A stretch of DNA of 64,000 nucleotides, the filler included, from Hyphochytrium catenoides (lineage: Eukaryota; Protista; Hyphochytriomycota), in NCBI GenBank assembly GCA_900088475.1. It is 10 parts of 10 records of this genome, joined end to end, with 100 filler letters (N's around TTAATTAATTAA, not from the genome) between each part and the next. Parts side by side here need not be neighbours in the genome. Positions count along the whole stretch, not along the records: positions 10,423 to 13,214 come from FLMG01003031.1; 9 more parts are not named here. One strand, written 5' to 3'. The notes under the pieces are model-generated. The model was not told the DNA's origin. It saw only the letters and a list, made by a program, of their open reading frames with translations, and ran no database searches. Position numbers and translations under genes: made by a program. Positions 10,131 to 13,314 of the stretch are shown in pieces. Numbering within the stretch: position 1 is the first letter of the stretch; the number at the start of each line of letters is the position of its first letter.

Positions 10131-11710
10131 GAGCCCGACTCCATAGTGACAGCTCGTGGGGTCGTAACTTTAGCGCTTCTCTGTCGTCCCTACGCCCCTC
10201 CTCCGCTTCATCTCATTATTACTAGTCTATAGGGTTATTTATCCGATGTTTATCCAATATAAGCTGCTTTTCACGATCATTTCCTCTTCTGACGTCGCTC
10301 TCCTCGCTGTTCTCTTCTTATANNNNNNNNNNNNNNNNNNNNNNNNNNNNNNNNNNNNNNNNNNNNTTAATTAATTAANNNNNNNNNNNNNNNNNNNNNN
10401 NNNNNNNNNNNNNNNNNNNNNNGAAAGTTTCTCAGTCTGGGACTAGACTGTTGCTCCTCTTCTCCGACCCTATCGTCTTTGTATCTAGAAGTCCCGTAGC
10501 GGAGTGTCCATTGGAGACGACGGAAAAGGTCGCCTTCTTCTGTAGGCGCCAACATTGCCGCTGGGCCCTTGTTAGTAGCTTTATTTCTCTCTCGTTCTGG
10601 CCTTATCTCTCTCGATTCTCCCGTGGGCTTGCACTTCTTGGTTATGCTGAAGTAACGCTCTGGCCGCAGGAGCCATATAGAGCTGCTAATTACTACCCGG
10701 ACGGCAGCTGGAGAGCTTTGCAACCGATAAATGTCTATGTATAAGGTCCCTCGCCTAATGGTGTAAGGATATGCCATGAGGATGGTCATCAGTCACCGTA
10801 AGCAGCAATAAAGGTGTACTTGGCTTCTATCCCTCACTGGTTCTCATTGCTTCGCCTAAGCACAGTGATGCTTGGTCTCCTCTGTCGTCCGTTTGGCCTT
10901 TCCCAATCACTAGACCCTAACTCGCTCCTCGCATCTACCTTTGTGTCTTCCTCAGAACCGCTCTTCCGTGACTCTTACCCGTCGTCCTACTTTCTCGTTT
11001 TCCCTACAATCTTTCCATTCTCCTACAAGTAAGATGGTCCTGAGTCGTAGAGCTGGCGTGCCTTAGTCTGATCTAATGGCTGTGGGCTTAAAAGTATCGA
11101 CTGCTTACGTTAGACCTTTATAAGCATTCCCTCAGCTCATAACTTTCCAGTTGGTGAGACGCAGTTCTGGAGAAGTTAACGGAGACAAGAACAGTGCAGA
11201 ATATGAAGGAGCCACCGCTAGACTGTCATTCCTATAAGGAACTGTAGAGACATTATCAAGTTGTTCAATAAGGAAAGATATGAATAGAGCGGGATGGAGC
11301 TTCTCGAAGAGATGCTGACTTTAGCTCATCTAACAGAAGAGACTCCACCACTTGTGCCGGATGATCCTGAGTTTGTTTCAACTCTGTGGACTAATCGCTT
11401 CTCGTTTATTTATAAGAAATATCCTTCTACCTTTACAGTGAGCCATTCTTCTCTTCTCACATCGTCTTGGCCTTCTAGAGGCCACCTTCCTCCTTATGAT
11501 ACAGATGAACCGCGACGTTTGAAAGCGTTACACAGAGTTGTGATATGGTCTTCTTAGTATGTCTGTTAGTTTACTACGAGGTAGAGAACTAGCGCCTTCG
11601 AGAAGCAAAGGGCGGAATCAACAAAGAGAGCTCTTTTCTGTTTCTGTCTCTGTATCCTTCTGCCTTGGTCATCATCGCGCTGAGAACTGTGTTGGGTGGA
11701 CCTGTTGATC

Positions 11711-12172
11711 TCACTTCTTGGCATCTTTCTTGGCGCCCTTTTTAGCATCTGCCTTCTTAGCTGCAGGAGCTGCGGGAGCCTCCTTTGCGGCAGGAGCAGC
11801 CTCCTTCTTCTCCTCTGGAGCGGTCGTAGGCTCTGCAGGCTTCACCTCTGCCTCAGCCTTCTTTTCTGTATCCTTCTCGGGCTTCTCAGCCTTCTTTTTT
11901 GCCACCATCTTGGTCACTTTCTTTACGATAGGCTTTGCGGGTGCAACTGGGAACGAGGGAGAGACAAAGCAAGCGTCAGAGAGTAAGCGATTAGTGGCAG
12001 TGGCAGAGAGACCTTTATCCGATAGAGTAACAAAGAGGGAAAGAGCAAATGCAACAGACGCACAGTGAGGCGAGATCTTTTGTATAGGTAAACGTTGGCT
12101 ACCTGGCTTGCCAGAGAGCCGTGCCGACCGTCTAGAAGGCTCTGTTGTTCCCTTAGCTGCTTTCTTTGCCAT
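11711..12172 (-). CDS. Small Lys/Ala/Glu/Pro-rich chromatin protein with HMGN-type nucleosome-binding motif (exons 12172-12103 and 11946-11711; 101 aa)
   Basis: Spliced product MAKKAAKGTTEPSRRSARLSGKP-VAPAKPIVKKVTKMVAKKKAEKPEKDTEKKAEAEVKPAEP...KKDAKK. Canonical GT...cccag intron at 11947-12102. Confidence 0.8.
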   Translation of the reverse strand: MAKKAAKGTTEPSRRSARLSGKPGSQRLPIQKISPHCASVAFALSLFVTLSDKGLSATATNRLLSDACFVSPSFPVAPAKPIVKKVTKMVAKKKAEKPEKDTEKKAEAEVKPAEPTTAPEEKKEAAPAAKEAPAAPAAKKADAKKGAKKDAKK

Positions 12173-13314
12173 TGTGCCACACGAGAGTTTCCTGCGACGC
12201 TAGATGCAGATGACACTTGAGGTCAGCTTCCGAGACCCTTAGAGTGACCGTGATATCTTTTTGCTCTTCTCTTCTCACCTTCTTTCACTCCTGTTTCTTC
12301 CTGAAGAATGACTGCTCGTTGAAGCTTCAAAATAGTAGCCGATGCCTTGGTATCTGCTGACTTTTGAATGGCACAAGGCACCACATTGACCCCGAGACAG
12401 CGCGGCGAGAGTAGAGACTAGAGACATACAACGGAGAAAGAGAAGCGTTCAACCGCGAGCAAAGAAACGCAGGGGAAAAGGCTGTCAAACTCACAGTAGT
12501 GTTCGGAGCTGAAGGCGAATGTAGAGCAGCAGGAGCAGAACTCAATGCAAACAAACCGCAGCAGAGAAAAGAAGGGGAAAGGAAGGGAAACCTCTCCTCA
12601 CGAGATGCAAGAAAATAGTGAGAGATATGCTTGGCTATTCTATAATCAGAGGGCAAAACGAGTGAGAGAGACAGAGTGGGAAACAGAAAGGGAAAAGAGA
12701 TGACCAATCAAACGAGAAAGAGACAGGTAAAAAGCTATGAAGAAGCAAGGAAGAGAGAACGAGAAAGAGCACTTCTGAGGCAGAACTGAGAGCCAAAAGC
12801 AGTAGTAATAACACTAATTTGAACTTAACCCGTATAATACCCTCAATATCAATAGTAGTAGGACTATGATTTGAAGATATAGACTTTTCAAAATCTGTAC
12901 GCCGGTAACGACCGTCCTGAAGGCTGATGGACCCTTCTGGGGGTTATTTCTTAGGGCATAGCCCACTCTTCGTGTCAGGGTGGCATCCAAGGATGCATTC
13001 ATTCCGAATATCATGCAAATGGCTTCGGAATAGGCGTAGGCAATGTCCTTTCGTTTGTGGCTGCTTTGACGGAGCTTCGACCTCTAGAACTCTGGACTCT
13101 GGATAGACGAAGACAGAGAAGACGAGAGGTAAACCTTTAGGAGGAAGCAGGTGAAGGCTATGGCTTTAGTGCACCAAAGGACTTGGCACGAGACAGAGGC
13201 CAAGGCATCAAGCGNNNNNNNNNNNNNNNNNNNNNNNNNNNNNNNNNNNNNNNNNNNNTTAATTAATTAANNNNNNNNNNNNNNNNNNNNNNNNNNNNNN
13301 NNNNNNNNNNNNNN

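What the first reader, a model, noticed from the sequence alone, without database searches (positions are those of the whole stretch)
11711..12172. HMGN-like nucleosome-binding protein in a protist/algal genome
Seen: a 101-aa K/A/E/P-rich protein with no aromatic residues, starting MAKKAAKGTTEPSRRSARLSGKPVAPAKP. Established: the HMGN (HMG-14/17) core is EP-x-RRSARLSA-KP-AP-x-KP, HMGNs are about 90-100 aa, bind the H2A/H2B acidic patch, and are generally described as vertebrate-restricted. Size, composition, motif position, the flanking EP and KP..AP.KP residues and a more acidic middle/C-terminal part all match. The intron falls just after the motif. Inference: either a deep homologue or a convergent acidic-patch-binding chromatin architectural protein; both would be new for this lineage.
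Basis: partly seen in the sequence, partly recalled or inferred. Interest (0 to 1): 0.8.

Follow-up and report, generated by a model that had tools for sequence, protein, structure and literature searches.

The report
Small HMGN-like chromatin protein gene
A real, spliced and transcribed gene in an unidentified non-vertebrate eukaryote encodes a 101-residue lysine-rich protein whose N-terminus carries the nucleosome-binding motif of vertebrate HMGN proteins, a candidate for the "HMGN-like proteins beyond vertebrates" that chromatin researchers are now looking for.

Summary
On the minus strand, ATG 12172 opens a CDS in two exons (12172..12103 and 11946..11711) split by a 156-nt GT..AG intron. 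Contigs of two RNA-type runs from different studies carry exactly this joint; a DNA run does not. The product is 101 aa, K/A/E/P-rich, with no aromatic residues. All three Arg, the only Leu and all three Ser lie within SRRSARLS.

Exon 1 alone hits Pfam HMG14_17 at E 0.001 and 20.4 bits, below the 23.5 cut-off. It aligns colinearly with fish and mouse HMGNs. The full motif EPxRRSARLSxKP occurs once, off-frame, in 596 Gb of prokaryotic DNA, so chance is excluded. Synonymous sites are scrambled relative to vertebrate cDNAs, which argues against contamination.

It is not a canonical HMGN. The C-terminal third is basic (+5), whereas HMGNs have -8 to -12. Exon 2 has no HMGN similarity. No search found an orthologue.

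Best reading: a disordered chromatin protein combining an HMGN-type acidic-patch arginine anchor with an H1-tail-like DNA-binding tail. Homology versus convergence is unresolved. The organism is unidentified.

The parts
12279..12419 (-). 5' UTR exon (at least this much is transcribed). It contains a 19-codon uORF, ATG 12386..12384, stop ending at 12327.
   Evidence: X6 contig record 14 covers 12279-12419, and its loose end continues with letters matching 12190-12199. The uORF is read.
12200..12278 (-). 5' UTR intron, 79 nt, GT..AG. An alternative acceptor 8 nt further on gives intron 12278..12192.
   Evidence: Loose ends of X6 (at 12279) and X4 (at 12193), table 7, read against the sequence. 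The intron sequence was printed. The X5 contig 12129-12279 is unspliced.
12103..12199 (-). Exon holding the last 27 nt of the 5' UTR, the start codon (12172..12170, context CACAATGGC) and codons 1-23 plus the first base of codon 24.
   Evidence: X4 and X6 contigs cover 12103-12193 and 12103-12183.
12104..12142 (-). HMGN-type nucleosome-binding core EPSRRSARLSGKP (residues 11-23). R15 and R18 correspond to HMGN2 R23 and R26; S16 corresponds to HMGN2 S24.
   Evidence: Pfam PF01101 hit, profile positions 8-27, 20.4 bits; pattern match; alignment A1; contact residues from PMC12487698.
11947..12102 (-). Coding-region intron, 156 nt, GT..AG, phase 1. It happens to be in frame and stop-free, so the genomic ORF reads through as 153 aa.
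   Evidence: Joint 11946|12103 in X4 and X6, absent from DNA run X2. A 1-nt deletion at 12078 in X2 breaks the read-through frame (table 4).
11711..11946 (-). Last coding exon: rest of codon 24 (V) plus 77 codons of K/A/E/P-rich tail, with the stop at 11713..11711. The 3' UTR continues below 11711; its end is unknown.
   Evidence: Contigs of X4 (11803-11946), X6 (11878-11946) and X5 (11710-11860).

Best explanation
This is an expressed nuclear gene (three exons, two of them coding) of a non-vertebrate eukaryote. It encodes a 101-residue, intrinsically disordered, strongly basic (net about +16) chromatin protein. Inferred mechanism: the N-terminal EPSRRSARLSGKP segment docks on the H2A-H2B acidic patch of the nucleosome the way the HMGN/Dsup motif does. 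R18 would act as the canonical arginine anchor (H2A E61/D90/E92) and R15 as the second contact (H2A E56/H2B E113). S16 and S20 would be possible phospho-switches. The K/A/P-rich stretch that follows, and the basic C-terminal tail, would bind nucleosomal or linker DNA like the lysine-rich half of the HMGN binding domain or a histone H1 C-terminal tail. Shown here: gene structure, transcription, splicing, sequence similarity to the HMGN binding domain, non-random motif. Inferred: translation, nuclear location, nucleosome binding. It is HMGN-like in mechanism but not a demonstrable HMGN family member. Independent origin (or divergence beyond recognition) is more likely than simple vertical descent.
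For: Splice joint and transcript contigs in RNA-type runs from three studies. Good start context, and an in-frame TGA 9 nt upstream of the 5' UTR exon junction. Pfam HMG14_17 is the only family hit for exon 1, E 0.001. BLASTP against a fish HMGN gives E 9e-5. The colinear alignment M.K..A.G..EP.RRSARLS.KP/AP.K has 26 invariant columns. All R, L and S residues of the protein sit in the 8-residue SRRSARLS stretch, a compositional island in a K/A/E/P background. The exact motif is seen once per about 6e11 bases of non-HMGN DNA. No strain difference falls in the CDS, while 11 fall in the flanks and introns. Literature: RRSARLSA arginines bind the acidic patch, and the related motifs RRSSRLTS (Dsup) and RRSARIAT (Dot5) are functional outside vertebrates (PMC12487698, PMC13347269).
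Against: The Pfam score is below the gathering cut-off (20.4 vs 23.5; 15.8 for the read-through ORF). There is no acidic C-terminal domain. Exon 2 has no detectable similarity to HMGNs. No orthologue or paralogue was found in any protein or contig collection, so motif conservation is untested. There is no evidence of translation or localisation. The strain comparison is weak: the chance of 0 of 11 differences falling in the CDS is about 0.16.
Confidence: 0.55

Rival explanations
1. It is a true homologue of vertebrate HMGN. Either the two share an ancient ancestor, pushing the family far beyond vertebrates, or an old transfer of an HMGN cDNA later gained introns and lost the acidic tail.
For: Similarity extends beyond the 8-residue core to the N-terminal M-x-K-K/R, the A-x-G, the EP and KP flanks and AP-x-K. 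Size and composition also match. The HMGN binding domain is split between exons in vertebrates too (PMC3879345).
Against: The score is below the Pfam threshold. There is no similarity after about residue 35 except composition, and the acidic regulatory domain is absent. No intermediate relatives appear in 1.8 billion representative proteins or in metagenome contigs. Synonymous sites are fully randomised, so any transfer would be ancient. Short motifs in low-complexity basic proteins evolve convergently with ease, as in Dsup and Dot5.
Confidence: 0.15
2. It is a globular-domain-less H1-like linker, nucleolar or DNA-binding protein of the kind known in kinetoplastids, dinoflagellates and Toxoplasma. 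It works through its lysine-rich tail, and the RRSARLS stretch has another role, such as a kinase site or part of a nuclear localisation signal.
For: About 100 aa, K27 A25 P11, basic C-terminus, no fold-forming composition. TgH1-like is 91 aa and lacks a globular domain (PMC9769792). RRS is also a basophilic-kinase consensus (own knowledge).
Against: The 11 specified residues of the motif, flanks included, match HMGN and are essentially never seen by chance. H1-like tails do not need Arg, Leu or Ser. The Pfam search gave no linker-histone hit. This rival is compatible with the best explanation for the tail.
Confidence: 0.2
3. The transcript is not translated into a functional protein, or the ORF is a by-product of purine-rich low-complexity sequence.
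For: No proteomic or ribosome data exist. There is a uORF in the 5' UTR. No homologues were found. The opposite strand is also open across exon 2.
Against: Splicing precisely preserves the frame. The start context is good and there is an upstream in-frame stop. The motif is non-random. Exon 2 is not a simple repeat. The CDS is invariant between strains.
Confidence: 0.08
4. It is vertebrate (host or laboratory) HMGN contamination of the assembly.
For: Vertebrate HMGN cDNAs do turn up as contaminants in metagenomes (L013-L015, and L009, which I took for human-like).
Against: Only 3-6 of 11 third positions are shared with vertebrate cDNAs, and the Arg codon families differ. The tail is unlike any HMGN. 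Two short introns lie in a contig of uniform depth, about 30x like its neighbours, in an independent DNA run, with strain-level SNPs.
Confidence: 0.02

Closest known systems
Vertebrate HMGN1-5 (Pfam PF01101, HMG14_17)
   Same: About 100 aa, disordered, no aromatic residues, K/A/E/P-rich. The N-terminal basic start is followed by EP-x-RRSARLS-x-KP-AP-x-K at the same distance from the N-terminus. Both serines of the core are kept. The binding domain is interrupted by an intron.
   Different: G replaces the final A of the octapeptide. There is no PKRK. No acidic C-terminal regulatory domain is present (last third +5 versus -8 to -12). The score is below the Pfam cut-off. The organism is not a vertebrate by codon evidence and gene structure. 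No family of relatives was found.
Tardigrade Dsup and yeast Dot5 HMGN-like motifs (PMC6773438, PMC12487698, PMC13347269)
   Same: Non-vertebrate proteins in which an RRSxR(L/I) motif binds the acidic patch by arginine anchors, combined with a separate DNA-binding region. In Dot5 the motif is also N-terminal (aa 6-13).
   Different: Dsup (motif at 363-370) and Dot5 (a thiol peroxidase) share only the core motif with HMGN. This protein also shares the flanks, size, composition and layout, and its core (7/8) is closer to RRSARLSA than either.
Globular-domain-less H1-like proteins of protists (kinetoplastids, dinoflagellates, TgH1-like of Toxoplasma, PMC9769792)
   Same: About 90-100 aa, lysine/alanine/proline-rich basic proteins without a folded domain. 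The tail here is of that kind.
   Different: No acidic-patch motif is described for those proteins. Sequence similarity to them was not tested here, because no reference sequence was in hand.

Membership tests
HMGN (PF01101 HMG14_17) | Invariant core octapeptide RRSARLSA in a ~30-aa basic nucleosome-binding domain | tested here: met
   RRSARLSG, 7 of 8, with EP before it and KP-(V)-AP-x-KP after it. Aligned column by column with three vertebrate HMGNs.
HMGN (PF01101 HMG14_17) | Scores above the Pfam gathering threshold (23.5 bits) | tested here: not met
   Exon 1 alone 20.4 bits, E 0.001. Read-through ORF 15.8 bits. Exon 2 no hit. The joined product was not scored.
HMGN (PF01101 HMG14_17) | Acidic C-terminal regulatory (chromatin-unfolding) domain | tested here: not met
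   Net charge by thirds is +9/+2/+5. In the three HMGNs the last third is -8, -11 and -12.
HMGN (PF01101 HMG14_17) | Bipartite nuclear localisation signal (N-terminal PKRK plus a basic stretch after the binding domain) | tested here: inconclusive
   MAKKAAK aligns with MPKRK, and lysine clusters follow the motif. No predictor or experiment was available.
HMGN (PF01101 HMG14_17) | Small (~100 aa) disordered protein without aromatic residues | tested here: met
   101 aa; K27 A25 E11 P11; no F/W/Y/C/H. Disorder is inferred from composition, not modelled.
HMGN (PF01101 HMG14_17) | Specific binding to nucleosome core particles, two per nucleosome | not testable with these tools
   Needs EMSA or cryo-EM.
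HMGN (PF01101 HMG14_17) | Phyletic continuity with other members (orthologues or intermediates) | tested here: inconclusive
   No relative found. The queries were low-complexity or very short, and the organism's clade may be unsampled.
HMGN-like acidic-patch motif proteins (functional class: HMGN, Dsup, Dot5) | Three arginines in the register R-R-S-x-R-(L/I) that are needed for acidic-patch binding | tested here: met
   R14, R15 and R18 with S16 and L19. Register as in PMC12487698 and PMC13347269. Function untested.
Linker histone H1 (winged-helix globular domain) | Globular H15 / linker_histone domain | tested here: not met
   No Pfam linker-histone hit at E up to 10. The composition excludes a folded domain.

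The most novel reading that the evidence does not exclude
The gene is a genuine, vertically inherited HMGN homologue in a non-vertebrate (possibly non-animal) eukaryote. The HMGN nucleosome-binding domain would then predate vertebrates by a very long time. The vertebrate acidic tail would be a later addition to an ancestral protein made of an acidic-patch anchor plus a lysine tail.
Probability: 0.15. Interest if true: 0.85.

Novelty: new variant of a known kind. Interest (0 to 1): 0.62.

Why it matters
Canonical HMGNs are held to be vertebrate-only. The two known outside cases, Dsup and Dot5, share only the 8-residue core inside otherwise unrelated proteins. [quoted passage not shown] They also say that finding them across lineages is the key to the motif's evolutionary history (PMC12487698).

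This gene is a concrete, expressed candidate that matches HMGN in core, flanks, size, composition and layout. It replaces the acidic regulatory tail with an H1-like basic tail.

It offers a simple natural test of two questions:
- Is the anchor plus a lysine tail sufficient for nucleosome binding?
- Does such a protein compact chromatin (H1-like) or open it (HMGN-like)?

Tried and rejected
**Protein searches, all blank**
- Word-index search with the 153-aa read-through ORF, its residues 1-40 and exon 2 residues 1-40.
- Exhaustive phmmer of the read-through ORF against 1.84 billion representatives: 0 hits at E <= 0.001.
- Exact-product look-ups for three ORFs of the piece: not on record.
- PDB phmmer with exon 1.
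- ESM Atlas with exon 1 and with exon 2: no usable hit.

**DNA pattern scans**
- The metagenome pattern scan gave only vertebrate HMGN cDNAs and chance hits.
- The viral scan gave nothing.

**Rest of the piece**
- Pfam on seven other ORFs gave nothing that identifies a neighbouring gene or the organism.
- Rfam gave nothing useful either.
- Repeat finders found nothing relevant.

**Literature**
- A search for the exact peptide found 0 papers.
- The paper on HMGN evolution (PMC4271525) is not held.
- I could not verify the exact intron position in vertebrate HMGN genes, so I make no claim of a shared intron.

**Other limits**
- Rejected: vertebrate contamination, chance motif, and the 153-aa read-through as the real product (splice joint, plus the frame-breaking deletion in strain X2).

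Full report
**1. What is in the sequence**

The piece 10423-13214 carries one recognisable gene, on the minus strand.
- The ATG is at 12172..12170, in the context CACAATGGC.
- Codons 1-23 read MAKKAAKGTTEPSRRSARLSGKP.
- A GT..AG intron of 156 nt (12102..11947) begins after the first base of codon 24.
- Exon 2 (11946..11711) completes that codon (G|TT = V). It adds 77 codons, APAKPIVKK...KDAKK, and a stop.

The intron is a multiple of three and has no in-frame stop. This is why the genomic ORF reads through as 153 aa. About 21% of shuffled introns are also stop-free. A second strain has a 1-nt deletion inside the intron at 12078. The read-through is therefore a coincidence, not a product.

**2. 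Is it expressed and spliced as proposed?**

Yes. Read laying found the joint 11946|12103 (skips 156, CT..AC on the + strand) in one contig each of X4 and X6.
- The sides of the joint are 91 and 69 letters long.
- The two runs come from different studies and carry different organism labels.
- The DNA run X2 crosses the region unspliced in one 1967-nt contig.
- X5, an oligo-dT RNA-seq library of a soil sample, holds two contigs at 95-100% identity: one over exon 2 and one over exon 1 and the 5' UTR.

The loose ends of X6 and X4 define a second intron in the 5' UTR: 12278..12200, 79 nt, GT..AG. X4 uses an AG acceptor 8 nt further on (12192). Transcription starts at or above 12419.

The 5' UTR exon holds a 19-codon uORF (ATG 12386). 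It also has an in-frame TGA 9 nt before the exon junction, so the ORF cannot start further upstream.

These are assembled contigs. They show presence and structure, not expression level.

**3. Composition**

Residues were counted on the two exon pieces, 100 of the 101.
- K27, A25, E11, P11, T6, V4, with no aromatic residue, Cys or His.
- All three Arg, the only Leu and all three Ser lie inside SRRSARLS. The motif is a compositional island in a K/A/E/P background.
- Net charge is about +16. By thirds it is +9, +2 and +5.

**4. Similarity to HMGN**
- Pfam: exon 1 alone (23 aa) hits only HMG14_17, E 0.001, 20.4 bits, profile positions 8-27. The curated cut-off is 23.5 bits. The read-through ORF gives 15.8 bits, and exon 2 gives nothing.
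- The metagenome scan returned three vertebrate HMGN cDNAs: L013 (mouse-like) and L014 and L015 (fish-like). BLASTP of exon 1 against the L015 product gives 12/20 identities, E 9e-5. Exon 2 gives no alignment.
- MAFFT of the read-through ORF with the three HMGNs places the 52 intron-coded residues as a single insert between KP and AP. There are 26 invariant columns: M1, K3, A6, G8, E11, P12, R14-S20, K22, P23, then A, P, K and scattered lysines.
- Past about residue 35 the similarity is composition only.

**5. Is this chance?**

I scanned for a degenerate DNA pattern encoding EP-x-RRSARLS-x-KP.
- Window shuffles: 0 of 200 matched.
- Viral contigs: 0 matches.
- 596 Gb of bacterial and archaeal genomes: 7 matches. 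Only one (L018) spells the exact amino-acid motif, and it is off-frame among stop codons.
- 241 million metagenome records: 16 matches. Five are exact: four vertebrate HMGN cDNAs or pseudogene-like pieces, and one off-frame hit in a bacterial ABC-ATPase gene (L011).

The exact motif thus occurs about once per 6e11 bases of unrelated DNA. A scan of roughly 3e9 bases would meet it by chance about 0.005 times. That figure does not even require the motif to sit ten codons into an expressed, 100-aa, K/A/E/P-rich ORF. Chance is excluded. What remains is common descent or convergence on the same function.

**6. Is it contamination?**

No.
- At the 11 identical residues of the motif, only 3-6 third positions agree with the vertebrate cDNAs, and the Arg codon families differ.
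- The tail is unlike any HMGN.
- In the independent DNA run the gene lies in a contig of even depth (about 30x), like its neighbours, with strain-level SNPs.

Whether organism A is a protist, an alga, a fungus or a small invertebrate could not be determined.
- No neighbouring gene or RNA was identifiable.
- Run labels are coded.
- Near-identical transcripts turn up in a soil oligo-dT library and, as spliced contigs, in two RNA-type runs filed under other organism names.
- In the X2 DNA run, two stretches (10865-11032 and 12941-13068) assemble as paired contigs with summed depth 36-43x against about 30x beside them. I read these as two haplotypes of a heterozygous diploid or dikaryotic genome.

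**7. What it is not**

Three defining features of canonical HMGNs were tested and not met:
- the Pfam threshold;
- the acidic C-terminal regulatory domain, where HMGN last thirds are -8 to -12 and this protein is +5;
- detectable relatives.

On the last point, three word-index searches, one exhaustive phmmer over 1.84 billion representatives, exact-product look-ups, PDB and the ESM Atlas all came back empty. These blanks are weak evidence of absence. The queries were either low-complexity or about 23 residues long, and the joined product was not searched.

**8. Most likely mechanism (inferred)**

In HMGN2, R23 contacts H2A E56 and H2B E113. R26 is the arginine anchor in the H2A E61/D90/E92 pocket. 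Phosphorylation of S24 is predicted to repel the acidic patch. Dsup uses the analogous residues (PMC12487698). Yeast Dot5 binds nucleosomes through RRSARIAT at residues 6-13 together with a second, DNA-binding region (PMC13347269).

By alignment, R15, R18 and S16 of this protein hold those positions. The lysine-rich segment after the motif and the basic C-terminus would contact DNA.

The protein therefore looks like an HMGN-type anchor fused to an H1-tail-like DNA binder. The tail resembles in kind the globular-domain-less H1-like proteins of protists, such as the 91-aa TgH1-like (PMC9769792). Without an acidic tail it may stabilise or compact chromatin rather than unfold it.

**9. Homology or convergence?**

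This is unresolved.
- For homology: the similarity includes flanks, order, position and size, not just the core.
- Against homology: there are no intermediates, nothing alignable after the binding domain, and short motifs arise readily in disordered basic proteins.

I put descent or ancient transfer at about 0.15.

- The spliced product was never assembled or searched. All searches used exon references or the contiguous read-through ORF.
It was not aligned, saved or searched further.

**Verdict**

Noticed in passing
window 11947-12102 (-): The coding intron is 156 nt (a multiple of 3) with no in-frame stop, so the genomic ORF reads through as 153 aa. About 21% of shuffled introns do the same. 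Strain X2 has a 1-nt deletion at 12078 that breaks the read-through frame, so it is probably a coincidence rather than a retained-intron isoform.
   Followed up: yes
window 12192-12278 (-): The 5' UTR intron has two acceptors 8 nt apart: AG ending at 12200 in X6 and AG ending at 12192 in X4. The soil RNA contig (X5, 12129-12279) is unspliced here.
   Followed up: partly
window 12327-12386 (-): A 19-codon upstream ORF (MWCLVPF...) lies in the transcribed 5' UTR exon and may affect translation of the main ORF.
   Followed up: no
window 10865-11032 and 12941-13068: DNA run X2 assembles two alternative contigs at each place. At the first, one contig differs by 17 letters plus 4 gaps in 168 nt; at the second, by 7 letters in 128 nt. 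Their summed depth is 36-43x against about 30x beside them, and I read them as divergent haplotypes of a heterozygous diploid or dikaryotic genome. A (CT)n tract near 10579-10613 varies in length.
   Followed up: no
window 11787-11823 (run X4, record 9): A 337-nt contig of X4 holds two separate stretches under 90% alike to this part of exon 2 and runs on into unrelated sequence. It may be a paralogue or another K/A/E/P-rich transcript in the same sample.
   Followed up: no
window 12420-12800 (-): The region upstream of the transcribed part is strongly pyrimidine-rich on the gene's strand (AT skew +0.5 and GC skew +0.2-0.3 on the + strand). It holds a CCAAT box at 12704-12708 (+).
   Followed up: no
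L013, L014, L015, L009 (metagenome contigs): Complete vertebrate HMGN cDNA-like sequences (mouse-like, fish-like, and one I took for human-like) sit in environmental metagenome or metatranscriptome assemblies. They are host or laboratory contaminants, or environmental DNA/RNA of fish. L009 was not used further.
   Followed up: partly
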